From Takakia lepidozioides (taxonomy: Eukaryota > Plantae > Bryophyta), in the NCBI GenBank assembly GCA_030704615.1, contig CM060731.1, forward strand, positions 4,774,001-4,838,000: a stretch of 64,000 nucleotides of DNA, written 5' to 3'. The translations under genes and the position numbers were made by a program. Numbering within the stretch: position 1 is the stretch's first letter; each line of letters opens with the position of its first letter. This document shows, piece after piece, positions 18,648 to 52,546 of this stretch. The notes below the pieces were generated by a model, which saw only the letters and a list, made by a program, of their open reading frames with translations, was not told the origin of the DNA and made no database searches.

Positions 18648-20446
18648 GTTACTCATAAAATAAAGGCCACCATCCAACACCCACCTATCCCCCACTGTAC
18701 AAATATACCTACCCCCTCCCCCAAATTAAAACAAATAAAGCCTGGATTGAGTCACTGCAACGCCCCCACAAGCCACACCAACAAAAGCCCCCCCCCCCAA
18801 TTCCTTCATTCTATCATCAATCCTACCCCCTCAAATACCCCCCTGCGAACTCTCATTACACCGATGGATCCCTTACCCAAACTAATGCAGGCTACGGTAT
18901 CTATCATGCAGGTACAGGGAGAGGGGTGGCCCTCGGACTCCCTGGTCTTGCCACTATTCCCAGGACCGAGCTTATGGCCATATACAACGCTCTCCTCCTA
19001 CTCGATACCTTTAGCCCCCCATACTTCATCTTCACTGACAGCCTTACCTCCTTATTCCTCATCCGCAACCATATTTCCCGACCCCTCCTCCCACCACCAT
19101 CATCCTGACCGCAACCTCATCTCAGCCATTATCGACGCCGCCGTCTCTATAAAGCACCCAGTACACCTACTCAAAGTACGCTCGCACACTGGCATTCAAG
19201 GGAATGAGGAGGCCGATCTCCTCGCTCAGCTTGGTGCCACCAAACTCAAAAGTCAAACCCACGAACGATCCTATCCATATCGCCCACTCCTACCCCTTTT
19301 GGTTTATACACCCAATTCCGAACCCTACTGCACCACGACCCATACGCAATCTCTTGGCTACCCTCACCCATGAAGCAAACAAACAGGTCGCAGCCTCTAT
19401 CAGTCATACCAAAGTACATATTAAAAAATGGACCCAATCCGAGGTATTACACCACAAACTCTCGAACCATTTCTGGCACACCAAAGCTACCACTGATGCA
19501 CAAATCCGCCAGACACTTAAATTCAGATACGCCCAATACATGGGTCACCAACGCAAACACATTTTCTGGCCACATCTCTTCCCATCACCTTACTGTCCGC
19601 TGTGCTCCACAACTCATAATGCACGTGATACCTGGCCACACCTCCTGAGCCAATGCACGCATCCGGTCATCCATGGTCTTCATATCACCAGACACAACCA
19701 AGCAGTCTGGCATCTCCACAAACTATTCAAAAAACGTGCCAAAACCAGATGGTTCACCCTCATTAATGCCGGTACCTTCCAAGGGAAACCACCAGACCAT
19801 ACTGTGCCGCCATGGCTTCTACCATGCACGTGTACCCGAGTACCCTGCTCATGCCCCGCCCGGCTCTGCCGGGACATACTCATTGTCCAAGGACTACCCG
19901 TTCAAGCCTCGCCACCTACTTCACCATCCCCGCAGCTCACCATCCATTTTATCGAGTTTACATTCTGCCATGATCGATACCCTCACTATTCAATCTTGGA
20001 AAAATGGCAAAAATACGCCCCACTCATTCTTGCAATTCGGCGGCAGGGTTGGAAGACTGGCCCGCTCACAGTTATCACTGCCGGAACTTGAGGCGACATA
20101 CACAATGCCAGTATTAATGATTTGCATGATAACTTCAAGATACCCATTCTTTCAATCCACCAATGTTTCAAAACAATCCATCTTACAACACTCCGCTCCC
20201 TTACAACCATCATCACCAACAAACGCCAGCTCGAAGCTAGCCTCTCTAGCGCACCCTAGCCCCCCCCATGGTCTCCCTAGATACCCAGGGGGTTCATAGC
20301 AGCCCTCCCCTCTATCTCTCCTTGGTTACTTGGTGTCCCACAGGATACCCTTACTATTATAGGGGGCAGTAGCCGGAAGGTGAAGTGACTCTTAGTTACG
20401 CCGGCTACGGCCGGAGTCTTCTCTCTCTCTCTCTCTCTCTCTCTCT
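18648..20446 (+). mobile_element. 3' part of a Dualen/RandI-like non-LTR retrotransposon (RNase H - CCHC - RLE) with (TC)n end
   Basis: HYTDGS, ELMAIY, IFTDSLTS, KVRSHTGIQGNEEAD (RNase H); CPLC...H....C; RLCRDILI...FIEFTFC...KWQKY (RLE). Homologous to 36866-38710 and cut at the family B LTR. Confidence 0.85.
20365..20418 (+). promoter_or_regulatory. structured 3' terminal RNA element of the LINE
   Basis: AGUA-gcc-GGAA-ggu-GAA hairpin, ccggc-UACG-gccgg hairpin and gacuc/gaguc closing stem; conserved in copy 2. Confidence 0.7.
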
Positions 20447-29700: not shown

Positions 29701-32700
29701 AGAGATTTTTATGTCCTTTCTATCCAATTTCCTCAGAATAGATTGCATCTTCTAGTTGGTTTGGGGAGTTCAAAGAATGATATTGCACACCATCTCACAA
29801 TGCAAACTTTGAATGAAGGGCATTTCATGTTTAATATTGTGTGCAGATATCACTGCTTGATCTGACAACATGCTCTCTTCTCTATCATGACAGTTGTTTT
29901 GATAGCAACTCAAGTGTCGTGAGTCTTGCTTTTGCAACTCTTCATCTATCTGATGATGGCACGCCTGTCTCATCGCCCCCTTCATCACCTTTTTCTTCCA
30001 AGAAGCAATCTCACCTTCCTTCAGGCTTCACACAAGTGGTATATGCGTCAAACAAGGATGCAACTATTGTGGTTATTGATGGGAGCACAGGTGCTTTCAT
30101 TGGTCCGGGTCCGTTGCAACCAAAGAACCCCTCTATTGCATTGTCTCTGCACCTTCTAGGTGGGTTCTTTCTCCTTTTATCAGCAATCCGATTGCTGTCC
30201 TACTTCACGATAACCTTAAGCTCTGTTCTCATTAGTTTGTTTTTTATATTTGATGGCATGGAGGGGGATGAGAACAATGATTGACACTGTGGGCATGGAG
30301 GGACACAGATGCTTTCGGTGCTCCTATCACATCACTGACCGACAAGGAGCCCAAGGAATTGAATGGGAGCCACTCATTCCCAGCTGGTGCAGGCTCAGAT
30401 GCCTTGTTTTTGCTTCTCTGCTGTGAAGACTGCTTGCGCCTTTACTCCGCATTTGCTGTCATTCAGGTGATTGGCTTCTCTCTAGTCCATCCTCATTTTG
30501 CGTTCTCTTGGAAATGTCACTATTCCAGTAGGTATTGAGCTTTGAAGAATTACATATCTTAGGTTGTGACCCTTAGTCTGGGCAATGGTAATGTGCGTGT
30601 TGTCCTGTTGTTGATATTCAATCAACAAATTATTGACATGTGTCTGGGAGAAAATGGTTTCTGGGTGTGAAATTACTGCTCTTTTGCAAGAGTATTCTGT
30701 AGAAAAGGCAGAGTGCGCAAATGTTCCTCACATCCCAAAAGCTTCCACAAGTGCATGTCCATTTCATAGAAAGTGCAGAACGCTGGCTTGTTTCATCTTG
30801 CACTCTTTCCATACGATGAACACATTTTGCAAAGTTTTGTATTGAGCTGCTGCTAAAGCCAGTATGATGGCTGGCAGGGGCAGTTTAACACTCTGCGAAA
30901 AGTGAAGCTGTTGGCACCCTGTTTGAGGGCTGCCACTTTTCAGCTTCCTGGTACTCATTCCGCCGGCCTCCTCCTCTTTTACCAGTCTGGTCAGCTTGAA
31001 CTTCGGTATGTAACTCGCAAATGCTCTGTATCTTTTATTTGGCCGGAGCAATTTTTTGGGTTGGGGCAGAGAACTTGTACTCGAGGTTTGCATGTTGCAG
31101 TCGCCCACTGACAAACAGGCCTTGCACATTTTTCAATCAGGTCGCTGCCAGATTTGGGCACTTTACAGGTGACGACATTAAGCACATGCTTAAAATGGGA
31201 GCTTGACCCCAGCTTGATCTCCTTGAATACACTCACATGCGCTCCAAATGGACGCCTTGCATTGGTATGGTGTAATACGCATTCTTCTTGATGCCCAGTT
31301 TTTTGCTCACTGTCTGTTTTGTTCAACCTTCAACCAGGTTGGTGTGCTGAGTTCTTGTCTTTTGAGGTCTAGTCTGCTCTTTACTCACAGACTTCTTCTC
31401 CTTCATTTTTCCTCATGGTGAGGCAGAGTTTGCCCATGGGATCCTTTTGTAGGATCTCAAAGTTGATGTGGTTAACAGTGCATGCCTGAATGTTTTTTGT
31501 TCACTTGATTGCTGGTTGGACTACATATTCGACTGGGCAGATTGATGGAGACAGGGAGCTCATTCAAATGTCTTTACTTGCAGAGGAAAATGATCTGAGG
31601 TAATGTTTTGTTCTTTCTGTAGTCTGGTTGGTGGCCTTTGGTCCACTTCCTACGGTCATATGTTCCTCATTTTTTTATTTCCTGTTTGACTTTTTACAGT
31701 GGCCTAGGTCTTGACCTTGATTATAAAGAGCTGTCTTGCATTGGTTTGACCAACTGCCATTTGTTGTGTTATGTTTCCTTACTAGCAGCATCCAACAGAT
31801 GGCGCTGTGGTTAGGGCAGAAGGCCGCCTTATAAGCGGTCGTGGGTTCAAAGCACATAGGTGTATGTTAGCCAACCGAGCTATAACAGGGGGGGTTGCTG
31901 GGTCAACCGGTTACCTAATGAGTGGATGACTTGGGACTTTTGAGTCCTTGGGGATGTTTGGGCAACCACGTTAACCGTTAGAAGGTGTCCACCTTCCAAA
32001 CGGAAGGCAGTAGCCCTTTGGGATGAAGTGACACCATAATATATGTTTTCTTCAGCAGAGTTTACCTTTTTACTTTTTATGAGCCTTACTCTTACAAGCG
32101 ATATTGTTACCTGCGCTCTTACCTTGCTCTCATGCTGTTACCGTCCTCTTCAATGTACCTTGTTTTAAGATTGTCTTTATGAAGTGTCAGATGGAATCTT
32201 TCCAATGTAAGAGTCAACCAGCTTACAAGCCTTGTCTACAGACCTTCACTAGAGCATGCAGTAACTGATGGTTTGGAGCAAGGCAACATGAGTGAGTCGG
32301 GGGGGGGGGAGTGTGACTGAGACCACATGTAAACAACCTAAATTGTCAAGCTAATCAGTCTTTCATGTTTATCTCCAGGCTACCGGAGTCCTTAACATGT
32401 CTTTTTGATAAGGATCTTGCTGCTGCAGCAGAAGCAGCTATCAATTCTGCTACATATATCCCAAAGAGGAAGGTACAAGCTTGTTTGCACTGGACTCTCC
32501 CATCTTACGACACTAGTGTCGTACTGGCTTTACGGTTGGCTATGGGGCATAATCCTTGTTTCCCCAGTCTTGAGATGTCTGGAAGCTTAGTAGTAAGTAT
32601 GGTCCAGTTGTACTATTACAATGTTATGACTAAACACATTTTGCCATTGCAGCAGTCACAGATGCAAGTGTTGTTAGGAGGTGTGATAAAGGAGATCAGG

Positions 32701-34339
32701 AGTGCACTGGAGCAGAAGCCCCCTGTTCTGCACTCTGCATCTGATTTATCTAAGCTTTTCTCTTCCCGGCCGTTCACAACCAGTCCTGCCAATCACTCAA
32801 AGGGGCCTTCTGACTTTTCGGCCTTGGATATGGGTATAATATCTCATACTGTGTTTCCCTGACAATCATGTGCAATACGAGAAGGATATCAAGTATACAT
32901 TTCTGTTCTGTTATTAACTCCCCCCCCCGCTGAATTTCTCGGTTGCTTCATGTGAATGTCTCAGCATTGATGTAAACGCTTGCACGTCCTTCATGCAGAT
33001 GACATTGAGATCGACAACCTAGAGGAGATTTCCCCAAGAGAAACAAGTGGATCTTCCAGTAGAAGAAAATTCGTCAACAAACTCAAACTGACTCTTAAAG
33101 GTACAACTGCAACTGAATCTGTAACTAACTTTGCTTTTACCTTGTTATCAGTGCTTCTAGAGTGTGGCCCAGCACTGTAAAGTCCTCAATGCTGCATCTC
33201 CTTCACCTAAGAAGCCCTTAAACAAATGCTTGTCCATGAGTATGACTGCATCTCCGTTGCAAAAATCTGCGGACTTTGCAACAGATTTGTCCCTGATTTG
33301 ACAACAAGCATTTTGGCAGTACCTAGGTAGCAGCTGCATCTTTACTGTGTTTGTAACACCATTGTACACAGGCAAGGAGAAGAGCAAGGAAGCAGACAAC
33401 AGAGCAGAGCTGTTTGGGGAGAAAGCAGAGGACATTCAGCCAAAAGCACGCACCGTAGATATGATTAAAACTGCCTATGGCTTCAAGGGGGGGGTAAGTA
33501 CTCGACACTCTTACATTTGGTTAGGACAATGGTGCCTTTGTCAAGGTCTGTGTTTGAACTGGCAGATATGGTGCCTCAAGTTTTTGTGTTCTCTTATGGG
33601 TGCCTTGTTTAGTGCAGGATGCCTCAGGTGCAGCCGGACTCGCCAGGGATAAGCTTTTGGAACGGGGAGAGAAGCTTCAGGTGCTTTACTCTTTTGCATT
33701 TGCAGCTGAGAGATTTGCAATGCTGCTTTCTTCTTGGGGAAAGCTTACATTTTCATCAATCTGAGACCAGGAAATGCTCCAGACTACTGCTACTTTAGTG
33801 TCACAGTACTTCAAATACACTACATCTGTTCTAGAGACATGGGAAAGCAGACATTTCCTCAGTTTGCCTGCACGTATGCAGATCTATGCTACAAGCCTCA
33901 AATGACTTTTCTCATGTGCTACACTAGGAGTACTCAGACTCTGGAGGCACTGGTTCCAAATGAAACCAAATTTGTTTGCTGTGTCAGCAATTAGACACCT
34001 GAATTGCGCCGTCCAAGCAAGACTACTCTAGGTTTAGTCCAAACAGCTGATGATATGGAAGAATGCACATCTCCAATAGCATTAGTCACAGTTGGTTCAC
34101 TTACCCCAGATAATACACCTGTTCTAGCGTTGGTTGTTTTACAATGATTATTGATCTACAGAGCAGCCTGTCTGGTCAATTTAAGTGTGCTTTTCTGACA
34201 GGAAGTGATTGTTTTGTGTCATTTCTGTCAGGCGCTTAGTGAGCGGACGGAGGAACTGGAATCAGGGGCAGAAAACTTTGCGTCATTAGCAAAAGAACTC
34301 GCCAACAAGATGGAAGGGAGGAAATGGTATCATTTTTAG
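23744..34339 (+). CDS. tomosyn / lethal-giant-larvae-like WD40 protein (syntaxin-binding protein 5-like), ~24 exons
   Basis: GT-AG exons read [13 protein letters not shown] / ...[18 protein letters not shown] / DGRIKLFG...PCKFLE / ...YIGDDNGNV / ...[10 protein letters not shown]...[10 protein letters not shown] / ...[13 protein letters not shown] / ...DDIEID / ...[11 protein letters not shown] / [13 protein letters not shown] / [35 protein letters not shown]. This is the plant tomosyn layout with a C-terminal R-SNARE-like helix. Internal exon bounds approximate. Confidence 0.92.
31789..32041 (+). mobile_element. tRNA-derived SINE in an intron, with a LINE-derived 3' end
   Basis: A box tggcgctgtgg (~31800), B box ggttcaaagc (~31844); 3' ggcagtagcc...tgaagtgac matches the LINE 3' end; degenerate flanking direct repeat tatgttt(c/t)ctt...agcag. 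Confidence 0.65.
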
Positions 34340-36887
34340 TGCACATTCAGCATCCAGCAGATGACCCAGTCATCAGGAGCAATGCATCTTGAGTGTCACT
34401 ATTATTATTGCCTACCAGCAATGAAAGGGCTGGCAAAGCAATCATCATCTGTTGTTGTCAAGACACCACTTTGTCCCACTTGAGTGATTGGAATTGCCGT
34501 CTCCCAAATGGGAGGTGATCGTCATCCTGGGTGAAGAGACACCATAATTCAAGTTTCTTATGGCACTTATCTTACCTTTCTTTTCTGATTGGTCAATGTG
34601 CATCAACCCTTGGCTGCCCATGAGTCAGGTCATGTGGATTCCGTCCAGTGCCAAAACTTGCAGCTAGGCTGCTTGATAAAAGTTGTAGAGGATAAAAATT
34701 GTCTTTTCATGGTACCTACCACATCCAGGGGATTAAAGGTCAGTGAGATACGGCCACTTGAATGCCACTTACACTCTTCCTTTTTTGGGAGCCCACCCTT
34801 AGTACTTGTGCAGTCCCGTACGCAGAATTGAATGGCACATCAGTTTACCAATTGTACATAGTCCGAAGATTTTGGCAATTCGAATGAGCTTAAAGGTTTA
34901 TACTACAACAAGTCCTTAGAGGGCCATGGCAAGCTAGAGGAAAAAACACTGTGATCTTCAAATCTGGAAGCATATGTGTATATGTATACATATATGATGC
35001 CATGCCAACCAAAGTCACTGTAAGTAGGAGCTTGAATGCATAACAAGGACCAAGGAATTGTAAGTCTACATATGGGTCTTTATGTTTAGATAGCGAGGGC
35101 TTTCCAACGGTACCAAGCACTTAGGGTGGGCCCCGCAGTTTGGGACATCTCAAATCTACAAAACAAAACAAACAAAACAAAACAAAACAAACATCTCACT
35201 TCATGTATTGATGTATATAGTGAAGCAGATGGTACACCCAAAACTTTTTTTTACAAGACACCGCCAAAGGAAGACTGATTAATTTAAGGACCTAACATAG
35301 AAAAAACCAGGGAAGCAAGGATAAGACTGTGTTGCAAAAGGTAAAATTTTAGTGCTTGCTCCTAAGCCCTAAGCGCGGCCCGAAAGGGGCCTCCAGCCAA
35401 CGTCCGCCAGGTGTAACTTGGTGAGATCTTGTTCAAAGGAGAGAAGGTAGAAATCGAGATGAGGCTTGCAGAATCCTGAAGGAAGTTGGAGGCAGTAATG
35501 GATCGAACAAAGTGGTGGGGAGGAGAGACTTGGCCAGAGTGATGAGAGGGTAGGGCTATGTCCACAGGAAGAGAGATACATGGCAGTACATTGGGTCTCG
35601 AGAATCTCTTGTTTCGTTTCGTGGTTTGGATACAAAGCAGCCAACATCTTTTCCGATCCTTGTGTCTTTATGTAGGATGTAGGATTGCATTCACTAGGGG
35701 GTGGAGAGACTCTCCTAGAATGTCAGTAGGACCTTGGGTTGCAAATGCCGGTGCGAAGAGGATGTTGAGATCGTAGAGAGGACACCATTTATATGGTCCC
35801 TAGTTTGTTGGAGGTCATCCCTGTGGTTTTCCTCTTCGATTTCAAGTATAGCTAGATGTCAAGAGGGCTGGTCTATTGATCTAATTTTCCCCAAGAAGGC
35901 TAAAGGCCTTTGGGGAGTATGTGTTGGTTTTTCCTGTCCTTTCCAGGGGCTGCCCAACAGCCATAGCCAAGGGAAAAGGGATCCCGTAGGACCAACTTCC
36001 ATGTCCCGGCCGTTGGAAAATGTTGACTAGATAATAAAAAAATGACACCGCGCTTCCATGTATTAATTAATAATTTTCGCCGGCGCCCAGATATCGGTGA
36101 GCGCAATACCTGGGAATTTGGCGCCAGAGTTCAATGGCGGATAATCGGTAATCACTTTTGACCTGTTGTACTGGGTTACCATGTCTCTTCTACCTGCTGT
36201 AAAGGTCACCTTTGTGCACATTGCTTGTCGGGACCCGCCACACCCTTTCCTTGTGCGAGGCTCATCACACTCACAAGCTCTTCATACTCATCGGACCTGC
36301 TAGAGGGTGTTCATGCCAGGCTCTCATGTTCATGCAGAACTACTCGCTCTTCACACTTGCCGGGACCCACCAAATCTAGTAGTTTGGCAACTATAGTGCG
36401 CTTGGCGTACACTCTTGCCAAGCTATGGGCTCTACATCATCAAGTCTTCACAAGAGTCGGAACCCACCAACTTTTGTCATTTGGCTACTACAAGTAAGTA
36501 CACTCTGACCCCACTTAGTATGACTCTTTTAGTAATGTGTTACATGATATAATGATGAGGAATGTTTGAGGCAGATTAAGGTGTCATTACTATCAATAGT
36601 AGAGGTATAGATAAAGATACACACATATTACTTCTATTATGGTTTAGACACAGATTAGGGGATGAATTTGAAAACATTTAAGAGAAGAGAGAATTATGCA
36701 GGGTGCCTGTTGATTGTCGGCAATTGATATTAGGTTTTATTTTTCCGGTCATGGCGTATACGAGTTCTAGTTTGTCAGGGTGGTTTCTCCAGAAGATACT
36801 CCTCTTCAAGATGGAATTCCTAACCAAGATGAAGATGAGGTTGTTTATTGGAAACCACAAGGATTAGAGAGAGAGAGAGAGAGAGAA

Positions 36888-36941
36888 GACTCCAGCCGAA
36901 GCCGGCGTAACTAAGAGCCACTTCGCCTTACGGCTACTGCC
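36888..36941 (-). promoter_or_regulatory. structured 3' terminal RNA element of LINE copy 2
   Basis: ggcAGUA-gcc-GUAA-ggc-GAAg and ccggc-UUCG-gcugg. Confidence 0.7.
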
Positions 36942-37099
36942 CCTTGTCGGGGGTGGGTCCTATATAGAAGACAGGTGACCGGTTGGTCACCTAGTAACCA
37001 AGGTATGTGTGTTGTGGTGGTAGAAAGAAGAATGAGGGGGTATCATCAGGGGGGAGAGGGGGGGGGGGGGGGGGGGGGCTTAGCGTTCCTAGGGTACTG

Positions 37100-37760
37100 A
37101 TGTTGGATTGGACTCGAGTTTTCGTTTATTGTGATAATACCTGTGAGAGAACGGAGGGCTGTGAGGTGGATAGCTTGAAAACATTTGTGAATTAGGGAGA
37201 TAGGGATGTGAAAGTTTTTTCGCATGTCATTAATGTTGGCGTTGTGTATGCCTCCTCTAGTACCTACCGTGATGATGGTTAGAGGACCGGTGCGCCATCC
37301 TCGCCGGCGGATAGCAAGGATGAGTGGGGCGTATTTTTGCCGTTTTTCCAGGATAGAGTCTTGTGGGTATCGGTCGTGACAGTATGTGAACTCGATGAAG
37401 TGGACGGTGAGTGATGGGGATGGTGTGGTAGGAGGTAGGGTAGCCATCTGTAGACCCTGTACTAGTAGAATATCTGGGCAGAGTCTGGCTGGACATATGC
37501 ATGTTCGAGAGGTACAAGTACATGGAAGCAGCCATGGTGGGACAGTGTGATCGGGTGGGCGATCTTGGTATGTGCCTACGTTAAGGAGTGTGTACCATCT
37601 GGTTTCAGCGCGGCTGAGGAGTAGTTTGTGAATATGCCATACTGCTTGGTTATGTTGGGTAATATGTAGGTCATGTATGATAGAGTGTGTACATTGGCTA
37701 AGTAAGTGTGGCTAGGTGTCACGTTCTTGATGGGTGCCTGAACAGAGTGGGCAGTATGGA
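37100..37760 (-). pseudogene. CCHC knuckle and restriction-like endonuclease (RLE)
   Basis: YCPLCSGTHQERDT*PHLLSQC; RLCPDILLVQG ... HFIEFTYCHD...EKRQKYAPL. Confidence 0.8.
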
Positions 37761-38099
37761 GATGGAAAAAGACGTGGCCAGAAAATGTGTTTGCGCTGGT
37801 GTCCCATGTACTGGGCGTATCTGAATTTAAGGACTTGACGGATTTGTGCATCTGTAGTGACTTTGGTATTCCAGAAGTGATTTGATAGTTTATGGTGTAG
37901 CACATTGGATTGTGTCCATTTTTTGATGTGGACTTTAGTATGGCTAATTGATGCAGCAGCTTGTTTGTTAGCTTCCCTGGTGAGAGTGACAAAGAGATTG
38001 CGAACGGGTCTGGGTGCAGGTGGATCTGGAACAGGGTGTATAAACCAAAATGGGTGAGTGTAGGCAATGTGAATAGGGTCATCAGAGGGGATCACATGA

Positions 38100-38490
38100 G
38101 GTTGGGCAGCGCTAGCTTGAGCAAACTGGTCGGCAGCGTCATTTCTATGTATATCCGTATGCGAGCGGACTTTGCGGAAGTGGATGGGGTGGGATTTGGA
38201 GAGAGCTAGTTGGACAATGGCAGTGATGAGATTGCGGTCTGGGTATGATGGTGGGATGAAGGGCGGGCTATGTGGTTTCTTATAAGGAAGAGTGAAGTAA
38301 GGCTTTCGGTAAAAATATAATAGGGGGGAGGGAAGGTGTCTAGCCTAGATAGGGCTTCATATATTGCCATAAGTTCAGCGCGTAGGATTGTGGCAGGACC
38401 AGATAGGCGGAGGGCGACACCCTGCTGGGTGGTCGCATGATATATACCATATCCGGCAGTGAAGTTAATGAGGGATCCATCCGTGTAGTG
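38100..38490 (-). pseudogene. RNase H domain of the LINE
   Basis: HYTDGS, RAELMAI, IFTESLTS, KVRSHT...NDAAD. Confidence 0.85.
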
Positions 38491-38934
38491 AGAGTGGGTG
38501 AGGGGAAATCTGAGGGGTATGTTTTGTTGACACATCTGAGGGATGGTGGGTGGGGCCTCGGGAGGGGCGGCATGTGGTGGACATGGTAGCGCCTTTAACC
38601 ATGTCTTGTTAGGTTTGATATTGAGGAGAGGGAGGGGAATATTTTCATAATTGGAAGTAGGTTGGTTAGTCTTGTAAGGGGGGGCGATGTTAGCTTTCAT
38701 TTTGTGAGTTTGTGTAAGTAGTTTATGGAGACACTGGAGGAGGGAATGGGGTATGTTGGTCGGAGAGGTGCAATGTACGAGTAGAATAAGGGTTAGAGAT
38801 GGTTCTTTTTGCTGGAGATATTTGGGAAGAGGGGGGGTGTGTGTGTATTTAAGTTGATTGGGTTCAATAGTGGCTAGTAAATGGGCTCCAGTGGGGAGGC
38901 GTAAAAGGGGGTGGAATCATCAGGCGATTTTTGT

Positions 38935-39215
38935 TGGGTGAGGATAAGTATTGTGAGAGCAAATGGAGAAGCGTGGGCGGCTAAACGCGCCCATTGGAGG
39001 GCCTCATCTGTCGGGGAGCCTAGAGGGGGGTGAGCAAGGCCTCTGTCAGACCAAGTGTGTTGTGTAGCTGTGCCTGTGGCGCCAAAGAGGCAGTCTCTAT
39101 GGTGCGGGCTGGCATATGTGGTTAGTTCCATGGGGCATGTAAGGGGGATGGAGTAGTATGAATGAGTGAGTTGAAATGAGTTAATAAGCAGTGTAAGTAT
39201 GTCTTGGGGGAGGGT
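38935..39215 (-). pseudogene. PCIF1/CAPAM-like adenine methyltransferase-like domain in the LINE ORF
   Basis: FQLTHSYYSIPLTC...YAS....DCLFGATG.......GLAHPPL...SPFALTILIL aligns by eye with the recalled PCIF1 pattern F....CFASPLNC...YCS....D..FGS.G...G..EANPPF...SPEPLSFIVF. Confidence 0.6.
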
Positions 39216-39681
39216 ACTGTGAGCACATGCTTGTGTCAGTCGGTTTGGAGAACGTGGTTTTTTCGGGGGGGGGTGTCTTTGAGGTATCGCTCTACTAACC
39301 AATTGATTTCGGTAGCGAAGTCTTGTTTGGGAGGTTGTAGGTCAATTGAATGTGTGTGGTGGAGTATTTTTCCCATAACCATTTTAAACGGGTATTAGGG
39401 ATTAAGCCAATGAATCGACCGTACTTAGCGTGTATATTAGAGAAGCGGGGGGCCATGCAAAACATGGGGGGGTCGTGATTGATGTCTTTGTCAGGGTTGC
39501 ATTCTGTTATGCAGATATGGAGATTAGAGGCCCGTGGGTTGTGTATGAATCGCTTGTCCATGGGTTGAATGGGGGAAGCATGTTGTTGATGAATATGGGT
39601 GAGAAAGTTGGTGTTGGAATGTTTGTGAAAGATGGTCAAGAGGGTGAGGTTGTGTGCGGGGTCACAGTCATCATGGGAGCC

Positions 39682-39825
39682 GAAAAGATCATCCTCTATT
39701 TGTCAGGTGTTGTCTTTGGAGGGGTATCCGGCCCATTTGCAATGGTAATAGGTGTCTATACATGTGGCTCCGAAGGAATCAATCGACGTTTGGGTTTTTA
39801 TGCCTAGGATAGCTTCAATTACGTA
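39682..39825 (-). pseudogene. chromodomain in the LINE ORF (missed by the ORF track)
   Basis: Manual translation YVIEAILGIKTQTSIDSFGATCIDTYYHCKWAGYPSKDNT*QIEDDLF; the stop sits at the conserved Trp. Confidence 0.8.
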
Positions 39826-40849
39826 GGCATCTGGATTTTCAGAGTTGAGTGGTGGGGTAGTGGGAGGTGGTGTTGGTAGTGGTTATGAGAGGAGGGTTGT
39901 GTTTGGCGGGTTAGAGGTGGTAGAGGTATTTTGGCAGCTATCTTGACTTGGTGTGTGGTGATGGTGGTGTGGTAGTTGGTGTTGTGGGGTAGGGACGAGG
40001 GGGGGGGGGGGGGGGGGGGCATTGTCGTTATTGGCGTATGTTGTTTTAAGCTTTTGGATAATGGAGGGTGCGGGATCTGATCGGTATTGGGGGAGTAGAT
40101 CTTGGGGAGTGTGTGGGAAGTATGGGCAGGGAATTCTACAGTCAAGAATGCATGAGGGGGAGGGGTGGCAAAATAGGGTGCGAAGGAAATGTAGGTATCG
40201 TCAGGTTTTGGTTGTGGCTCTGGAGTGTTTGAGGGTGAATTCCTTAGGTGTGACGAGTCTGTGTCCAGTTGCGGTGGTGATTTGGGTAAGAGTGGTAATG
40301 TGGCGCTCTCGTAAGTAGGAAATGGTAGGGGTTCTTTGTTTAGGATGAGAGTTATTAAATTGGGAGAGAAATGGGCTGGTGAGCCAAGCTCGTTCTAGCT
40401 GTGATGAGGTATTGGGATAGTTTGGCAGATGTAAAATGAGCAATGTACGTGCAGTAGGGGAGTGCAGGCAGGCCTGTGGGTGCAGTGACGAGAGATAGTT
40501 AATCCATTGTACTGGAGGGCAAGAAATTTGAGGAGTCCTTGATAGATGATACCTAAACGGCTTGGATCATTGAGGGCTTCTTTTATTTGTGTGCCAAGTG
40601 TGCGGGCATAGGAGATGATTAGGAGGCTACATCCGATCTGTAGCAATCGGTGGGAAGTTGGGTAAGGGCATTAGGAGTGCTAGTTGGTAGGCCGCATACC
40701 CGTTTTGTGAGCTGGAAAATATTTTTGTCAAGTTTCTGATGTCTGGTAAGGAGAAAGGTGCAGCATGAAATGAGTATTGGACTTGGGTTTTGAGTACTAA
40801 TTGTATGATGGATAGTTTAGGTCTAATGGCAATTGGGGATTTGAGAAGG

Positions 40850-41760
40850 GCCAAACGTTTGGTTGATTAGTTTGGTTGTAGTACCAGTTTTTTGGACGTG
40901 CCAAATAAGGGAGGGTACCAACTGTATGCCGAGATATGTATATGGTTCATCTGGGCCAAGAAAGGGGAATGGTTTGTTTTGATAGTTGACATAGAGTTTA
41001 CAGTGGGAAGCAATGGCAGATTTGGTGAGCCGGCTATGGTGTGGGGCCGCAGTGATGGCGCATTTGTGGAGGCTGAGTTCCATACCTGACCACAAGTTGA
41101 AGCGATGCAATTTGGTGACTTGTCGGTTTAGGTGCTGTGGTTTATGAGCGAGGATGGTGAGATCATCTGCATAAGCGGCTGCGGAGATATCACTAGAGGA
41201 GGTTTTGTAGTGGTATCCTAACTTTCCACGGGCAAGCCATCTGAGGAGGGGTTCTAAAAAAATTATAAATAGGTAGGGGCCCTTGGATGGTGCCTCGTAG
41301 GATTAGGATAGGGGGTGGAGCCGTAGTAAGCTCCCGCATATTCCGTGGTGCTATTCGTATAAATGTTACCAATAAGCTGGATGGCATCTATGGGGTATCC
41401 CAGTTCCGTCATGATGGCAAGTAAACGTCCATGGTCAAGGGAGCCAAATGCATTCTTAAAATCAATATAAAGAAGGGAAATGTCTTGTTTTGTGAGCTTA
41501 ACATCTTCTAATGCAGAGATGACGTATTGTATTTGTCTGGTTGTACTGCGTGTGGCTCTGAAGCCCTCCTATAGGTCGCTGAGTATGCGGTGTTGCTCCC
41601 CATAAGCAGAAAGCATGGTGGTGAGCGTACTTGTGAATAGCTTGTATATGGTGTTGGCCAGTGCAATGGGACGATAGTTACTGAGGTCTGTGGGGTCGCC
41701 TTTTTTTAATAACAGTCTGGTGCGACTATGCTTCCAAGAGTGTGGGATACGTTTTAGCTG
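40850..41760 (-). pseudogene. non-LTR reverse transcriptase
   Basis: NYRPIALANTIYKLF, EGFR, YIDFKNAF, RGTIQG, AAYADDL, YTYLGI. Confidence 0.93.
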
Positions 41761-42839
41761 GTAGCAGAGTCTAAAAAATTGTGTAGATAATTTGATGAAG
41801 GTGCGGGTCTAGCGCTTGTAGTATAGTGTTGGGTATAAAGTCAGGGGCGGGGGTTTTGGATTTAGAAAGGGCCTTGAGGCATGAGTCATAGAGATCAATG
41901 GTAAAATAGTCCAAAATGCGGTCAGTGGTGGTTCCACGCTTATCTAATGCGAAGCCATCTATGTCATGTCACGGATAGTGTTTGATTTGACATACACAGT
42001 CATGGGAGTGTATAGTGTAGGCAGTTTGTAACAGTGGGTGTGTAGGTTGAAGATGCTTGGGCCCATATTTCTTTGTTGATGGTTGTGAGATTGGTTATTA
42101 AGTGGCCTAGTCGGTGTCGGAGGCAGTCAATGGGTGGGTTGAGTGAGGGGTTAAAGATGGCTTTATGAGCTTTTTTGGGGTGATAATGGAGTAATTGGTT
42201 GAAGGAGAAGACGAAATTTTTATGATTGTCAGCGGCTTTTTGTTTGGTGATGTTGTATGCGGCTTTGTTTGCTTCCCTTCCTATTTTAGATAGGGCCGCA
42301 CACCAGTTAGGTATGGATGCGGGATCATTAGGTGGTGGCACAAGCGCGTGATAGGGTGCCAAGGTTGTTAAGCAGGTGATACAAGGGTTGGATCTCCAAT
42401 TGTTGTTAGGGTGGGTTGTGGATGTTTGGGGTATAATGGTGAAGGCGTGTCTGATCGTGTGATATGTATGGAGGTGCGCGGTTCAGGCTCGTTTTTGTGT
42501 GTGTGTTAGGTAGCCGCCATTTTGTGTGGAGCGGGTGGTTTGTGGGACGTCTAGGAGAGCGCAGCATGTGGCAAGGACGCTTTTGGTCATTTCAGTCATA
42601 ATGGTTGTGAGCGTGAGTTCGGCCTAGCGCCATGTGTCTTTTAGAGACAGTGTTGCGTTCTTGTTAAAGAGAATGTCAAAGATCAGTTGGAGTATAGGGG
42701 GGGCGGTGACTGGGTGAAAGAGTTGTTGAAAGGCGGCTATATTGCGTTGTGGCAACGGGGATAGTATCCGGGATTGTGGGGGTGGGGTGTGTATAGATGG
42801 GATGGGTCGGAAGGGGATGAGGGATGGGGGGAAGGTTAT

Positions 42840-43620
42840 GGAGACAGGGTAGTGATCAGAGTTACAAATACTGTTGATGTGGATATGGCTGTTTAGATAT
42901 TGAGGTATTGCGTTCTATGTTTTAAGGTAAAAACCGTCCATTAGGCTGAGTGAGGAGTAGTTAAGTCCCCCTTGCCTAGAGTAGTGGTGGTCAGTGGGGA
43001 TGTATTGGAATTGGTGTAGTCGGGTGAATTTATCCCATGAGTGGTCGGGTGGGGACGGAAGTCTGTGTGTGCCATTATATGTGTGGCCAAGTAGTGCTAT
43101 GTATCTATTAAAGTCGCCGGCTAGTATGAAGTTGTGGTGTTGCGTTGTGGGTTGGGAGACGGTATTTGAGATTGTATGAAGAATCTCCGGGATTAGTGGG
43201 AGATCATCAATGTGTGATGGCATGTATAGGTGGATGAGAGTAATAGGGGGGAGAGCAGGGAGATGTAGTTGTATAATTTGGAGGTGTGACCGTAGAGGGA
43301 TGGGGACAAGTATTTTGGTGGTGGTGCTAGTGGAGTGATGCACGTGCGGAGAATACCTAGTGCGACGCCACCTCGGGCAGGGTGGTAGGCGGCGGATCGC
43401 CGGGAAAGGCATTGCGTGGCTGTTAAGGGGTGGCCATATAACATATAATAAGCCGGGAGAAGTTTGTTTAAATAGGAACTATTGCAGGTGTTGGTGTTGA
43501 GCTTGGTTTATTGTAGGAGGATAATATGCGAGGAGACGGAGTCTGTGAGAAGGTGTATGAGACTTTGAATACTTGTGGCTAGGGATCCAACATTCCAGGT
43601 AGTGATGCATAGTGAGTGGT
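42840..43620 (-). pseudogene. apurinic/apyrimidinic-like endonuclease (APE)
   Basis: ITTWNV, ILLQ*TK, GGVAL, LYMP, AGDFN, NSDHYPV. Confidence 0.9.
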
Positions 43621-44857
43621 TGGGGGTTTCATTGGATGAGGGTGTGTTGGTGTGTTGGGGGGGGGTTGTGGCTAAGGTGCCATGGTGGGGGAAGAGGGGT
43701 GTGGCCGAGGCGAGGGTTGAAAGCCAAGAATTAGGGAGTGAGCTTGGAGGATTGCGTTGAGAATGGTGTCGGACAGGAATGGAACTTGTTTGAGATGGTG
43801 TGGAGGTCGTGGGTGGGGTTGGAAAGATAATTGCCAAGTATTTATGAACTTCCCCGGGGTTTGATTGGAGAAGTTGAAGCAAGGCCTGTAGATTTGTTAG
43901 GTAGTGGGGAGGTGCTAAATAGTTGTGAGGGTGGGCGGGTAATTGCTGTAGCTTGTGTAAAAAGGCACGTGCTTGTGAGTCGGGGTGGGTCAAGAAGTAG
44001 TCGTTACATATGCGCTGAAGGAAGGGTATAATTATATATGTGTTGATAGCATGGGTATGTTTGTGTGTTAGGCCCAGGATGTATGTAGGTATGGTGTGTC
44101 GATATGTGGAGGATGATAAAGGGAAATGGATGTTGGTGATGGATGTAAAGGTGTGGATGGAGTAAGTGGATGCAGGGAGCGCGGCTGGATGGAGTAAGTG
44201 GACTGTCGGGCAATATGGATGAGGTCGCCAGGGCGAGGATTGACTGTGGATGGAGAAGTGTTTTGCCGAATGGATGAAGTATCGGTTGCGGATGACGGGA
44301 GGTGGGCGGGTGGGAGATCTAATTTGATTTGAGGGGGAGACGTGTCCAGGTTGGAGGGCTGCCACGTTGGAGCAATTGGGCGGGCGGGCGTGGTGTGCGA
44401 CTAGGACGGGATGGAGCAGGAAAGGCTTGTATCTGCCTTGAGAGCTCATTAATCGGGTAGAGTGCCGGCCGCGTTGTCTATGATGGGCGTGGTTGGGATG
44501 TGTGATGAAGCGTAAGTGCACAATGTGATGTGGAGTAGGAGTAGAGAATGAGTATGTACAGAGTGAGATGGTAGTGACACTGGAATCATAACGTGTATTA
44601 GAGGATGGGGAGGTCACAAAATTGGCTTGACATAGAGCCAGTAGAGAGAGCAGAGAGAGTGCGTAGTGTGTAGAAGAATATAGGCCGTGGAGTAGGAGGC
44701 CACGGGGGCAAGGAGCTGTGTAAATACTTGAAAGAGGGCTGGAAAATGATGGATGATAATCACTTGAAAGAGCTTGTAAAAGAGAGTGGTAGTGTTGAGT
44801 GATAGTAAATGAGTGAATCCAGAAGTGATAGTAAATGATATGAATAGCAGTGAAATG

Positions 44858-45098
44858 AGGTAGCATTTTCCCAAGGTAACATTCTCCCAAGGGAACATTT
44901 TCCCAAGGTAGCATTTTTCCAAGGTAACATTTCCCAAGGTAGCATTTTCCCAAGGTAACAATTTGCCAAGGTAGCACTTTCCCAAGGTAGCATTTTTTCA
45001 AGGTAGCATTTTTCCAAGGTAGCATTTTTTCAAGGTAGCATTTTTCCAAGGTAGCACTTTCCCGAGGTGGCACTTTTCCAAGGTAGCATTTTCGCAAG
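44858..45098. repeat. minisatellite, ~14 copies of a 16-17 bp unit (ggtagcattttcccaa)
   Basis: Head-to-tail units without spacers. Confidence 0.95.
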
Positions 45099-46439
45099 CT
45101 AGCCAGTAGCTCCGAATATCTTGTAAAAGAGAGCCAGTGTGCCCAAGTAGCTTTGGAAGAGGAGACCGAGAGTGCTGAGTGGTCCACACTTGGAAAATAG
45201 CCTGTAAGAAAGAGATGAGGGTTAGAGCGATGAACAAATAATGGTGAGTACAGATTAGGGATAATACCAAGGAGCGAGGCCTTGTCACTTAACTGGAAAG
45301 AGAGGTACATGCTGAACAGACTTTGTCTGGTATTGGTATGACAGCAGATACGGGTATGGAAACAGGTGATTTTTATGTGGGGAGGCCAGGTAGAGAGAGC
45401 ATGGAGGGATGGTGGCAGCAGAGTAGTGCCCATAAGAGTATCTACATTCATAAGATGTGTGATAAGTCCATCGCAGTGTGACATGAGAGTGAGCACAAGC
45501 GTGACTGAAGGATTGAAAAAGAAATGGTGAGGCTATGGTTGGAGACATTACCAATTGGTCGTCAAGTAGGGCAGCAGGTGCCCATACCAGTACTGGTGAT
45601 TGTGAATATTGGATTCTTGGTGGCACTGCCGATAGTGTGTGCTGATAGTGTGCTGCCCAGATAGTGGAGTTACTGTAGTTGGGGGTGAGCTGAAACCTGG
45701 GCCAGCCCAGACAAAGCCACCCAGCAACAATTGGCCTGGCATAGGATCTGTTAATTACGGTGCCATGAACTGCATTTTTGCATTGGACTAACTTTCTTTT
45801 AAAGAGAGGGGAGGGAGGTGGGATTTGGGAGTAAAAAGCAGTACTTTGTTGAGAGATTTGAGAGGGGTGAGGACAGGTATTACCTGGTAGCAGGCCATGT
45901 TGGAGGTTAGGAGAATTATACCAGCGCCATATGGGGAGCTGTCTGCCGAGAAGTTGGTCAACGTATGCAGCAGCCATACTCCAGAGACCAGTCCACTGGC
46001 TGATGGTGCTACTCCCCGCAGCAGAAATTGCCAGCCACCATTTAGAGCTGGTTGAGGGGGTTTGGTGCCCTAGATCAGCTACCCAATAATTTGTTGAAGT
46101 ATTTGGTGCATCAGTAGCTCCACAATCTTTCAGAATTGATTGATATCCTACATCCCTGACCCCCATGCCAATAGCCCCATCGTTCTTGAAGGTGCTGTGG
46201 TGTGGCAATATATCAGCACTTGGACCGCTCAAGATGAGTTGGTGGTCAACATCAACCTCACCAGTCTGGTTGTGGTACTGCACCAATAGCCTTCCACATC
46301 TGCCAAATGGTTTGGTGGCTATCACAGTCAGTCGAAGTGTGCCCTCCAGCAGCACCTCCAAAATCAGAAAGTTGTCGTGCATCAATAGCCCTGGAGTTTA
46401 TTGACTCCCTTTGTTGACCTAAATCAGTACTGATCCCAT

Positions 46440-47330
46440 GTCCGCTTTGAAGACTGGCATACATGTCAACAAGGGCATTATCCACGGAGACATCTGACTC
46501 AAATCCAGATTTGATGGTTACGGCATGGACCCACTTGCCCTCCTCCGTTGCTCCTAGGCTGGCACAAGCATTGAGGATACTGAGGAAAGTGACTTTGTTT
46601 GGTTTGACACGCTCTCGTTGCATCTGCCCAGAGAGTTCTAAGGCTGCATCACCTTGACCATACTGAGTAGACCCTTCAATCATTGGAGTCAAAGAGGCTA
46701 CATACCGTTCAGGCATTTTGAAGAACACTCTGCGAGCATACACCACACTCCCACCCTTGCAATACATGGCGATAAGGGCAGTCCCCACAGACGGATCTGA
46801 TGCAAATCCAGCCTTAATGATTGCCGCATGGATCTGCTTGCCCTGTTCCAGAGCTGCTGGGACGGTACATGCATTGAGGACACTAAGAAAAGTGATCTGG
46901 GAACACCTCCCTGGAGCCCACTCCTTGCTTAGAAAGGGGTTCAAAGTAATCAGTTTACCGATTTCATCGTATGTCACAGTCTTGACGGCTGGATCCCCAG
47001 CCAGCCCTTGCTGAGGAGGTCCTGCAGTTATGGCGATCCAGGGGAGAATGTTTTGCTCAGAAATTCTGCCGAGCATTAGCCGAGCGTCAGCCACACTCCC
47101 ACACATTGGCATTCTTCACGGTGAGTATGACTGAAATCCAGCTTTGATGGTGTCCAAATGTATACATTTACCATCCCTCAGAGCTGCTGGATGGGCACAC
47201 GCACTGAGGATACTGATAAGTGTGGTTTGCATCCATGTGAACACATTTCGTTGAGCCATATTGTCAAACCCACAGCGTGCAACCTTAACACTCCCGCATT
47301 TTGCATACATGTTGAAATAGAGAGCTGCCT
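46440..47330 (-). pseudogene. PLS-class pentatricopeptide repeat gene fragments
   Basis: MYAKCGSV..AR..FD.M, ITFLSVLNAC...ALEQGKQIH, VGTALIAMYCKGG, KPNKVTFLSILNAC; interrupted and without a terminal E/DYW domain. Confidence 0.85.
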
Positions 47331-48075: not shown

Positions 48076-49699
48076 CAGAGTGGGGGGGGAGCAACATATT
48101 GGGGCTGTCATTTGCATCCATTTCAGCTGCCGGTGCAGCCGCCAGCAATTCTTAAGACCGTAATGGAGAAGCTGACATTTGAGCTGCAACAGGGGTTGAC
48201 GAGCCTCTTCCATGCTTGCAATCATTGAAGCAAGCCTCCATGCTCGCAGTCCTAGCTCGGGCCATGAGCTTTTTGAGAGATCCGCACGAGAAATCTTTGA
48301 ACTCTTGTTTGGAGTTGACGTAGTTGTGTTTTGCAAATCGTAGCCAGTATTGATGCTCCAAGGTCTTTGACTCTGCAGCTTGCGAGAAAGAGATGCTTGC
48401 AAGGGGGGGCAGATTTGGGTGTGCCTCTCCCCAGTTGCACCGAAGTCCTCAGCAGCATGCGGGCGGACGCCAGGGTAGACCGTCTTATACTGGCATTCCC
48501 ATGGATCTCCAGCAACACGCTTGGGCGTAAACAGGCTGAGGCAGTGAGGTGCTGTGGTGGTGGTCATACTATGGAGTGCAGAGTGGTTCAGCATAGCTGG
48601 TGTATGCTCGTGGTGCACGATGAGTGCATTAGCATGCGAAGTGAGGAAAAACACGATCAGAAGAATACAACACTTGGTGTAGCCTCCTCGCACAGCAGAT
48701 ATGGCATCCAGAGGCCATCTTCCGCCAGGTCGAGTAGTGGCACTGGCAGTATGCAGGAGGGTAGAGCACGCTGTGATGCCGAGTTCACGCAGGGCCTGAC
48801 TTGAGCACGAGAGGCTCGAAAGTAAAGGACTATAGAACAACCCACAAATGAGCATTGAGGCTTTAAATAAACACATCAGGATAGACTTGCTATGGGCGAA
48901 TCGGGTGGCCAACCTGGTGTAACCGAAGAAAGAAGCCAGTGGGTTGTACTTCAGACCTTGGGGGAGAGGTGCAGCTTGGACTGGAGATCGCCGAGAGCGC
49001 CTAGCGGGTTTCTTCAACATAAAAAGAAGGCTACGGGTGGGGGCCCCGGGCAGACCAGACTTCCAGGGGACAGCGGCGAGAGCGGCCTTGCGTTGATGAG
49101 CTCCGAAGGTGAACATCAGTGGCGCTTGCACCTGCTCAGGACACCAGTTGGTGGTGGTGGTGGTCCCGAACTCCTTGAGAAGGGATTTGGACAGTAGAGA
49201 CCCCTCTAAAAGCAACAAAAGAGAGCTTAAAAGGCACATACAGAAACTCTTGTAGGGAAGATTGACATAGAGTACGACGGGAGTAGCAGTATTGAGCTTG
49301 GGGGTGAAAAGCTTCACAGAATCTTGCAATGCATAGCTTAAAAGAAGCGCAAGAGTCAGGCAGTATAGAGCAGAGTGACACTATCCTTAGCAAGACAACA
49401 ACGCTGCGTAGCAGCGTAGTGAGCACGAGACTTGGCCATGGCGGCGACCAGAGAGGCAACAACGCCAAGACAAATGGGATCAAATGCCTGCAGATTTCGA
49501 AAAAATATATGATTATCAGAAGCGAGTTCCATATGACCAGAAGACATATTGGGAACTGACTCCACAAGAACGGAAAGACCATCCTTTCAAATTTCCCAAA
49601 ACGATTATGGACTGCACAGTGTACGATGCACTGGAGTTGTGATTTCGTTGAATGTTGTGGAACCAACACTTATGCACAAAGTTTTGTTGGAGGAGGTTG

Positions 49700-50833
49700 C
49701 ACAAAGGGACGTGTGTGGCATGAGTTCAAACTTTATTATATAAAGCCTCGCTCCACCCACGGGTGGAAGCAATCTTCAGATTTGGTAATGCGAGAGGATC
49801 CGGAACGGTTTCAAAAGAGGTTTCGGGTTTCTGTCCCTACCTTTCACTATATTCTTGAATTGGTCACAGCGGAGATGACAAGGAATCCACCACTTGATAT
49901 AATCACCATAATTGGACGGCTACTCCCCGTTCCCAAACAGGTTGCAATCGCTTTGTGACGGTTTGGAACGGGTGACACGCATACGTCCATAGGGGAGTTA
50001 TTTGGGGTTGCTGATTGCACATGCGTGAACATTTGCAAAAGGTTCATAAAAACGCATATTCTTGGAGCATGCCATTACATCTACAAAGGCCTACTGGTGA
50101 GCTGGCTATGGCACAAGTGAAGACTGATTTCGAGAACATGCATGGAATACCACAAGTGTGCGGTGCAATTGACTGCACACACATTAAGTTTGATCGACCA
50201 GCTCACGAAAAAGGCTCAGATTGGTACGACCGTGATCATAATTACTCAATGATACTACAAGGTATCATAGATCACCAAGCTCGATTTATTGATGTATTTG
50301 TTGGCTTTCCTGTGTCAGTCCACGATGCTCGTGTTTTCCAGCGGTCAAACCACCATGCCCAAGTTGTAGAGAGGACACGATTGAAAAACTGACCAACGGT
50401 GGAGGTTGAAGGAGTCTATGTCCACGAGTTTATTATTGGCGATGCAGGTTACACATTGGATCGCAATTTACTGGTTCCTTGGCTTGGAGTTACTCTTCCA
50501 CGTATGTACCGGCACTTCAACTACAAGCACTCACCTACTCGCATGGTAGTTGAACATTCCTTTGGGCTATTGAAAGGAATATGGCATATTTTGAAGAATA
50601 CTATGGCATGCCCAAATTTGCGCAAGCTTCCTAGTTTAGTTGTAGCTTGTTGTTTGCTGCATAACACAATTATAGATCGTGGAGATGAAATATATGAAGG
50701 GATTGTTCTTTGGGGTCTCCATAATGAGGGATATCTACAACAAATTATGCGTGGTGCGCCTTTAGATGAGGCTCATCAATTGCAAATGACAATTGCAAAG
50801 CATACATACCTTTTAGAGGCTACCCGATTTTGA
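49700..50833 (+). pseudogene. PIF/Harbinger (HARBI1-like) transposase, with stops and a frameshift
   Basis: RFRVS..TF, QVAIAL, GAIDCTHI, VHDARVF, IIGDAGY, FNYKHS..RMVVEHSFGLLKG.W, CCLLHN. Confidence 0.92.
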
Positions 50834-52324: not shown

Positions 52325-52340
52325 TGGTGGAGATGCGGGG
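52325..52340 (+). promoter_or_regulatory. primer-binding site, probably tRNA-Ala
   Basis: tggtggagatgcgggg directly after the LTR, complementary to ...CCCCGCAUCUCCACCA. Confidence 0.8.
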
Positions 52341-52462
52341 TAACTAAAGTCGTTAACAGAGGATTTAATGAGTACGGAGCACCTGAGAACAGTAAATTGG
52401 GTACGGGGATTTTGCATGATTGCAGGGAGAGGGGTGGCAAAATGGCGGTTGTTGTCTTGCAC

Positions 52463-52501
<39 letters not shown>

Positions 52502-52546
52502 CTGCTCGTGTTTTCTTGTGTTTTGAGAGTTCGGCAACCAAGCGCG

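What the first reader, a model, noticed from the sequence alone, without database searches (positions are those of the whole stretch)
36866..44850. Dual-endonuclease LINE with chromodomain and methyltransferase-like modules
Seen: on the minus strand the order is APE, RT, chromodomain, MTase-like domain, RNase H, CCHC, RLE, then a structured 3' end and (TC)n. Established: APE together with RLE defines the Dualen/RandI clade, best known from green algae. Inference: a land-plant Dualen-like lineage whose single polyprotein also holds a histone-mark reader and a SAM-type fold. I do not recall this combination being described. A second, diverged copy (18648-20446) shows the family spread.
Basis: partly seen in the sequence, partly recalled or inferred. 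Interest (0 to 1): 0.92.

Follow-up and report, generated by a model that had tools for sequence, protein, structure and literature searches.

The report
Dualen LINE with cap-methyltransferase-like domain
This is a broken plant copy of a known two-nuclease jumping gene (Dualen) whose protein also carries a histone-reader fold and a relative of the mRNA-cap methyltransferase; nearly all Dualens checked carry that enzyme fold, some with an intact-looking active site, and no paper found here mentions it.

Summary
Confirmed: a decayed Dualen/RandI LINE (minus strand) with APE, RT, chromodomain, methyltransferase fold, RNase H, CCHC, RLE, a structured 3' end and a (CT)n tail; a 70%-identical 3' fragment lies at 18649-20446. 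It is one element: three land-plant-type relatives are collinear, and its RT nests inside the Dualen clade. The fold is specifically CAPAM/PCIF1, the mRNA cap m6Am methyltransferase (profile E 5e-14; model Z 20). It is not a land-plant addition: 68 of 70 RT+RLE polyproteins carry it, and algal relatives have chromo or split-chromo+PHD modules in the same slot. 16 of 67 domains keep an NPEY motif; the window (HPPL) and all plant-type copies lack it yet stay under purifying selection, so probably a nucleic-acid-binding pseudo-enzyme. Plant-type relatives add an ORF1 and a 2A-like peptide and lack Josephin. Papers found report N6-adenine methyltransferases in DIRS/LTR elements and a SET domain in cryptophyte Dualen, not this; Repbase and the 2005 paper could not be read. 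This scan noted the family elsewhere in this genome before (unchecked notes). Function is inferred, not shown.

The parts
36866..45950 (-). Decayed Dualen/RandI LINE, copy 1 (5' limit approximate; ORF1 of relatives not found, so probably 5'-truncated)
43613..45532 (-). Open low-complexity N-terminal part of the polyprotein frame, includes the 16-bp minisatellite; no Josephin, no recognisable 2A motif
44858..45103 (.). 16-bp tandem repeat, 15.4 copies; relative L094 has an 18-bp array in its 5' region
42840..43612 (-). APE endonuclease (TWN, YMP, GDFN, DGFY, SDH motifs; the first catalytic Glu codon is a stop)
40620..41968 (-). Reverse transcriptase (YADD) and thumb, broken by stops and frameshifts
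39610..39837 (-). Chromodomain; cage positions Y, W, Y all present in this copy; one internal stop
38770..39549 (-). CAPAM/PCIF1-like N6-adenine methyltransferase fold with part of the helical domain; motif I YSIPLT, motif IV HPPL instead of NPPF/NPEY
38105..38496 (-). RNase H (YTDGS, RAEL), one frameshift near 38245
37690..37771 (-). CCHC zinc knuckle, one internal stop
37089..37689 (-). Restriction-like endonuclease (PD..IEF); likely stop of the polyprotein at 37089-37091
36889..37000 (-). Structured 3' end: hairpin, three-way junction with AGUA/GAA strands, terminal C(UUCG)G hairpin
36866..36886 (-). (CT)n tail
18649..20446 (+). Copy 2: 3' fragment (linker, RNase H, CCHC, RLE, same 3' structure, (CT)n), 70% nt identity to copy 1, abuts a Gypsy LTR

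Best explanation
A dead genomic copy of a land-plant lineage of Dualen/RandI LINEs. Shown: the anatomy, the clade, and that the chromodomain and CAPAM/PCIF1 fold are inherited parts of the Dualen polyprotein. From established LINE biology: the element moves by target-primed reverse transcription. The endonucleases nick the target, RT starts on the structured 3' end and repeat tail, and RNase H removes the RNA. Inferred: the chromodomain (chromo+PHD in many algal elements) tethers the complex to marked nucleosomes and biases insertion. The CAPAM-like domain was ancestrally an active N6-adenine methyltransferase (NPEY type), most likely acting on the cap-adjacent A of the element's own mRNA. In the land-plant lineage and many algal ones it has lost catalysis and is kept as a binding module for the capped 5' end of the element RNA, which would aid cis-preference, RNA stability or 5'-end completion. 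Identity and anatomy about 0.95; pseudo-enzyme status about 0.8; cap/5'-RNA binding as the retained role about 0.45.
For: RT tree: window in a 6-row plant-type group (SH-aLRT 100) inside a 60-row Dualen clade (98), sister (94) to elements with canonical chromo + NPEY. 50 single ORFs hold APE+RT+MTase+RNase H+RLE; 68 of 70 RT+RLE proteins hold the MTase, and a 69th a weak remnant. The profile hits only CAPAM in PDB, E 5e-14. The model of an algal-type domain (P0270, pLDDT 85) matches 6irx at Z 20 over 232 residues, next best Z 8; the match includes part of the helical domain that helps bind the cap (PMC8287941). NPEY occurs in 16 of 67 domains, scattered over the RT tree, and goes with a downstream PxW (14/16 vs 6/51). 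Plant-type MTase L094 vs L100: 57% identity, dN 0.32, dS about 2.1, like APE. The MTase tree groups the same plant-type set (99); Mantel r 0.29, 0 of 999 permutations. Chromo model: the top 30 rows are nearly all chromo folds. Many diverged copies cover all 5.9 kb laid, chromo and MTase included.
Against: No binding or activity data. The structure models are of relatives, not of the broken window copy. NPEY differs from the canonical [DN]PP[YFW], so activity even there is unproven. The third cage residue is missing in most plant-type chromodomains, so methyl-lysine reading may not be general; the best fold matches are CHD-type domains, some DNA-binding. The WW domain and most of CAPAM's helical domain are absent. 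No intact single-ORF plant-type copy was obtained (L094 has three frameshifts). No insertion bias was tested.
Confidence: 0.55

Rival explanations
1. The CAPAM-like domain acts on DNA or the RNA:DNA intermediate, not the cap. NPEY versions write 6mA on the new insertion to exploit 6mA-marked active chromatin, as proposed for DAM-LTRs. Degenerate versions only bind target DNA or the hybrid, next to RNase H.
For: It sits between a chromatin reader and RNase H. DAM+chromodomain LTR elements show raised 6mA and expression (bioRxiv 10.64898/2026.05.21.726589). Land plants lack the algal 6mA system (PMC4738411), and all plant-type copies have lost the motif.
Against: The fold is far closer to the cap enzyme CAPAM (Z 20) than to Dam or other DNA MTases (Z 6-7.4). 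Many algal Dualens have lost the motif too.
Confidence: 0.3
2. The plant HP-type domain is still catalytically active with a remodelled motif IV.
For: Purifying selection like APE; the motif I core (Y/F-S-x-P) and the DxxFG stretch are kept.
Against: The Asn and the aromatic residue, needed in NPPF enzymes (PMC8287941), are both replaced and vary freely among copies (HPPL, HPHN, IPPH, YPTD). The PxW co-motif is lost with them.
Confidence: 0.08
3. The fold is only a structural spacer of the polyprotein with no ligand.
For: Wide motif drift in most lineages; strong decay in one sister lineage (P0289).
Against: It is retained across the clade, conserved like APE, and has invariant NPEY in a quarter of lineages.
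Confidence: 0.06
4. The window is a chimera of nested elements (an APE-RT LINE, a chromovirus fragment and an RNase H-RLE element).
For: Many breaks in the copy; one relative (L003) has the two halves in opposite orientation.
Against: L094, L095 and L100 are collinear. 50 intact single ORFs exist. RT and MTase trees agree. Other genomic copies cover every junction laid.
Confidence: 0.01

Closest known systems
Dualen/RandI LINEs (Kojima & Fujiwara 2005; described in PMC3636483, PMC5029228, PMC9977147)
   Same: APE + RT + RNase H + CCHC + RLE in one frame, simple-repeat tail; RT nests among Josephin-bearing Haematococcus and other algal Dualens.
   Different: Land-plant host. No Josephin protease. 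Relatives carry an RRM-like ORF1 and a 2A-like peptide. The CAPAM-like fold and chromo/PHD module are not in the descriptions I could read. No long target-site duplication was found here.
Cryptophyte Dualen-1_GCr (PMC5029228)
   Same: A Dualen with a methyltransferase domain.
   Different: That is an N-terminal SET (protein-lysine) domain. This is a Rossmann N6-adenine fold between RT and RNase H.
CAPAM/PCIF1 cap m6Am methyltransferase (PDB 6IRV-6IS0)
   Same: MTase domain plus the end of the helical domain; FASPLN motif identical in many Dualens; Z 20.
   Different: No WW domain and most of the helical domain missing. NPPF is NPEY in some Dualens and degenerate (HPPL) here.
DIRS1 MTase and DAM-LTR/EpiLTR elements (PMC4738411; bioRxiv 10.64898/2026.05.21.726589)
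   Same: Retrotransposon-borne N6-adenine MTase, placed in the PCIF1 clade and called likely inactive for DIRS; combined with chromodomains in LTR elements.
   Different: Those are tyrosine-recombinase or LTR elements. Neither paper names Dualen; the 2026 preprint has no PCIF1/CAPAM mention.
Chromovirus integrase chromodomains
   Same: Chromo fold on the integration protein, the model for chromatin-guided insertion (own knowledge; also cited).
   Different: Here it is internal to a LINE polyprotein, with a longer first hairpin, and is split by a PHD finger in many algal relatives.

Membership tests
Dualen/RandI LINE | APE and RLE in the same element, flanking RT | tested here: met
Dualen/RandI LINE | RNase H and CCHC between RT and RLE | tested here: met
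Dualen/RandI LINE | RT groups with Dualen elements | tested here: met
   clade of 60 rows, SH-aLRT 98, includes Josephin-bearing Haematococcus proteins; quick tree, RLE-only outgroup, only one APE-only row, Repbase reference sequences not available
Dualen/RandI LINE | N-terminal Josephin-like protease (typical, not universal) | tested here: not met
   no hit in the window; none in L003 or L014; some algal members carry OTU or C48 instead
Dualen/RandI LINE | Single ORF | tested here: inconclusive
   APE-to-RLE is collinear, and other copies carry indels at several of the window's frameshifts; four plant-type relatives have an extra upstream ORF
Dualen/RandI LINE | Target-site duplication | tested here: inconclusive
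   none found for either copy; both 5' ends are uncertain or truncated
CAPAM/PCIF1 MTase family | Sequence and fold homology of the MTase domain | tested here: met
   L094 and L099 pass Pfam PF12237's cut-off
CAPAM/PCIF1 MTase family | Catalytic NPPF-type motif IV | tested here: not met
   HPPL in the window, degenerate in all six plant-type rows; NPEY in 16 of 67 rows
CAPAM/PCIF1 MTase family | WW domain and cap-specific activity | not testable with these tools
   no WW hit in any Pfam scan; activity needs an assay
Chromodomain | Three-stranded sheet plus C-terminal helix fold | tested here: met
   Pfam Chromo E 6e-5; model pLDDT 87, top VIA rows are chromo folds, Z 5-6.5
Chromodomain | Aromatic cage for methyl-lysine | tested here: inconclusive
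   Y/W/Y by alignment in the window; third position absent in most plant-type relatives

The most novel reading that the evidence does not exclude
Dualen LINEs as a clade carry an unreported epigenetic module: a chromo (+/-PHD) reader next to a CAPAM-type N6-adenine methyltransferase. It is active in NPEY lineages, which would make it a LINE-encoded enzyme that modifies its own RNA cap or new insertion. It was repeatedly turned into a binding-only pseudo-enzyme, as in a widespread land-plant lineage that also changed to an ORF1 + 2A + ORF2 layout.
Probability: 0.35. Interest if true: 0.8.

Novelty: new variant of a known kind. Interest (0 to 1): 0.62.

Why it matters
Dualen sits between RLE-type and APE-type LINEs, so a clade-wide domain bears on what the ancestor of APE LINEs carried. 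CAPAM homologs are thought of as host cap writers. A family of LINE-borne copies, naturally split into NPEY and degenerate forms, gives ready test pairs for what the fold does for a retrotransposon, and Chlamydomonas has an active Dualen (PMC9977147). It extends the recent picture of retrotransposons carrying adenine methyltransferases and chromodomains from DIRS/LTR elements to LINEs. It also shows Dualen as a multi-family resident of land-plant-type genomes.

Tried and rejected
The window's MTase piece alone found nothing in PDB or the Atlas; it needed the family profile. Nested-chimera reading rejected. 'Land-plant-specific acquisition' rejected. The Rfam rsmX hit on the 3' end (26.8 bits vs cut-off 56) is treated as chance; no hammerhead core by inspection. 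TSD search negative. ORF1 of relatives and a 2A motif are not found in the window. The Kojima & Fujiwara 2005 paper is not held and Repbase is not available; from memory its abstract already mentions an Arabidopsis Dualen, so presence in a land plant is not wholly new. The host was not identified: PPR, intron-containing genes and plant transposons say land plant; 'moss' in my scripts is only a label. Left out of all comparisons: L080 (labelled human gut), and L085 and L091 from their first use; L028 from then on.
Full report
Observation. On the minus strand from about 43610 to 37090 the window encodes, in order, APE, RT, a chromodomain, a methyltransferase fold, RNase H, CCHC and RLE, in many stop-free pieces. 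Pfam gives Exo_endo_phos_2, RVT_1, Chromo (6e-5), PCIF1_WW (0.011) and RNase_H on those pieces. HMMs built from relatives place each domain with far lower E-values. About ten stops and ten or more frameshifts make this copy dead. A 3' fragment at 18649-20446 is 70% identical, shows purifying selection against copy 1 in the RLE region (dN 0.17, dS about 2) and is cut by a Gypsy LTR. No target-site duplication was found. The host is a land plant by its neighbours (PPR, plant transposons); the species was not identified.

One element, not a nest. The RLE half finds relatives in which MTase, RNase H, CCHC and RLE share one ORF. Three plant-type loci (L094, L095, L100) match the window's pieces collinearly from APE to RLE; L094 has only three frameshifts. 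In the organism's own runs, thousands of diverged contigs cover all 5.9 kb laid, including chromo and MTase, and several of their indels fall at the window's frameshifts. Depth there is not a copy number. One relative, L003, has the halves inverted against each other with a 14-bp duplication at the joint; I read it as a rearranged copy.

Clade. A near-intact algal element (L013: Josephin-like, APE, RT, MTase, RNase H, RLE, one stop) retrieved about 100 long polyproteins, many with Josephin and named from Haematococcus. In an RT tree of 83 rows the window falls in a plant-type group (SH-aLRT 100) within the MTase-bearing Dualen clade (98), sister (94) to elements with canonical chromodomains and NPEY. 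The tree is a quick one with an RLE-only outgroup and one APE-only row. L1 and R2 structures score only 66-114 bits against the plant-type RT. APE plus RLE defines Dualen (PMC3636483).

The methyltransferase. A 51-sequence profile hits only CAPAM/PCIF1 in PDB (E 5e-14). The model of an algal-type domain (pLDDT 85) matches CAPAM at Foldseek E 5e-12 and Z 20 over 232 residues, next best Z 8. The match covers the MTase domain and the end of the helical domain that helps hold the cap (PMC8287941). 68 of 70 proteins with RT and RLE carry it, and 50 hold all five core domains in one ORF. The exceptions are an RLE-only element and one with a faint remnant. So it is a Dualen trait, not a plant addition. 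Motif IV is exactly NPEY in 16 of 67 domains, spread over the RT tree and linked to a PxW motif (14/16 vs 6/51). It is degenerate in the rest, including all six plant-type rows (window HPPL). Yet the plant-type domain is as conserved as APE (57% identity, dN 0.32, dS about 2.1) and tracks the RT phylogeny. Inference: ancestrally active, repeatedly reduced to a selected pseudo-enzyme. The NPEY rows also cluster in the MTase tree, which may reflect shared constraint rather than kinship.

The chromodomain is conserved across plant-type copies, folds with pLDDT 87 and matches chromo folds in nearly all top rows (Z up to 6.5). The window has all three cage aromatics by alignment; most relatives lack the third. 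By inspection, algal Dualens have in the same slot canonical or tandem chromodomains, or a split chromo-like fold often interrupted by a PHD finger; Pfam confirms PHD and weak Chromo hits in some.

Other anatomy. Four plant-type relatives have an upstream ORF with weak RRM likeness (nucleolin E 0.13) and a D(I/V)ExNPGP-type 2A-like motif about 235 residues before APE. No Josephin was seen in those scanned. 2A-like peptides are known from Haematococcus Dualens. Neither feature is recognisable in the window copy. The 3' ends of seven plant-type sequences share a three-way junction with AGUA and GAA strands and a terminal hairpin whose arms differ but still pair, followed by (CT)n, (CTT)n or (TA)n (read by inspection, no formal covariation test). 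The fold z-score is -2.2 for copy 1 but -0.7 for copy 2. The last 70 nt are covered ten to ninety times deeper than the rest, with varied upstream sequence, which suggests SINE-like passengers or many sister families; RandI-partnered SINEs are known in Chlamydomonas (PMC3747384).

Mechanism. Mobility by target-primed reverse transcription follows from LINE biology; dual nicking has been proposed to explain long duplications in Chlamydomonas (PMC9977147). Chromatin tethering by the chromodomain is inferred from chromoviruses. For the CAPAM-like fold I favour action on the element's own capped RNA (methylation in NPEY lineages, binding only here) because of the specific CAPAM match. Action on DNA or the hybrid is the main rival. 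None of this is tested.

Literature. N6-adenine MTases of the PCIF1 clade are reported in DIRS1 elements as likely inactive (PMC4738411). A 2026 preprint reports DAM domains with chromodomains in DIRS and LTR elements and names neither Dualen nor PCIF1. A cryptophyte Dualen has a SET domain (PMC5029228). I found no description of a PCIF1-like or chromo/PHD module in Dualen, but could not read the 2005 paper or Repbase, and Pfam flags the domain weakly in many public proteins, so prior notice is possible. Earlier notes of this scan report the same family elsewhere in this genome; they are unchecked and were not used as support.

Verdict. A real, dead copy of a known LINE clade. The added value is a clade-wide, apparently unreported CAPAM-like domain beside a chromatin reader, and a distinct land-plant lineage. 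New variant of a known kind; interest 0.62.

Noticed in passing
window 36895-36965: The 3'-terminal 70 nt is shared by very many genomic contigs with unlike upstream sequence, and appears in two runs guessed to be RNA: possible SINE-like partners or sister families.
   Followed up: partly
L003 3752-11930: Relative whose 3' half (with (TA)n tail) is inverted against its 5' half, with a 14-bp duplication at both joints; not the usual twin-priming geometry.
   Followed up: partly
L014 49-3876; L095 5571-6971; L100 6170-8251; L003 11223-11930: Conserved ORF1-like protein upstream of plant-type Dualens, no Pfam hit, weak RRM likeness.
   Followed up: partly
P0209, P0210, P0214, P0273, P0285; P0260; P0235: PHD finger in the chromo slot of algal Dualens; OTU or C48 protease in place of Josephin in some.
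   Followed up: partly
window 1713-2981: Gypsy protease followed by a C5-cytosine methyltransferase fragment (Pfam DNA_methylase E 3e-5); Gypsy-DNMT3 elements are known in streptophytes.
   Followed up: partly
window 3453-9008 and 13019-18645: Two Gypsy copies as a 5.7-kb inverted pair, 93% identical, with an assembly gap near 9009-9508.
   Followed up: no
window 51782-60702: Gypsy element with 92%-identical LTRs, a dUTPase-like domain between protease and RT (E 5e-5) and an extra ORF at 52802-53737 with no Pfam hit.
   Followed up: partly
window 49626-50833 and 46258-47112: Harbinger-type nuclease fragments (+) and a PPR fragment (-) upstream of the LINE.
   Followed up: no
window 27020-33650: Intron-containing host gene on +, tomosyn/lethal-giant-larvae-like by eye; exon pieces gave no Pfam hit.
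   Followed up: no
P0151 1-200: Nearest Atlas clusters to the plant-type MTase are PCIF1-family proteins mostly from giant viruses (score 0.88-0.89, lead only): possible exchange partner.
   Followed up: no
P0289, L059, L060: Sister lineage with APE-RT-RNase H-RLE in which the MTase is nearly or wholly unrecognisable.
   Followed up: partly
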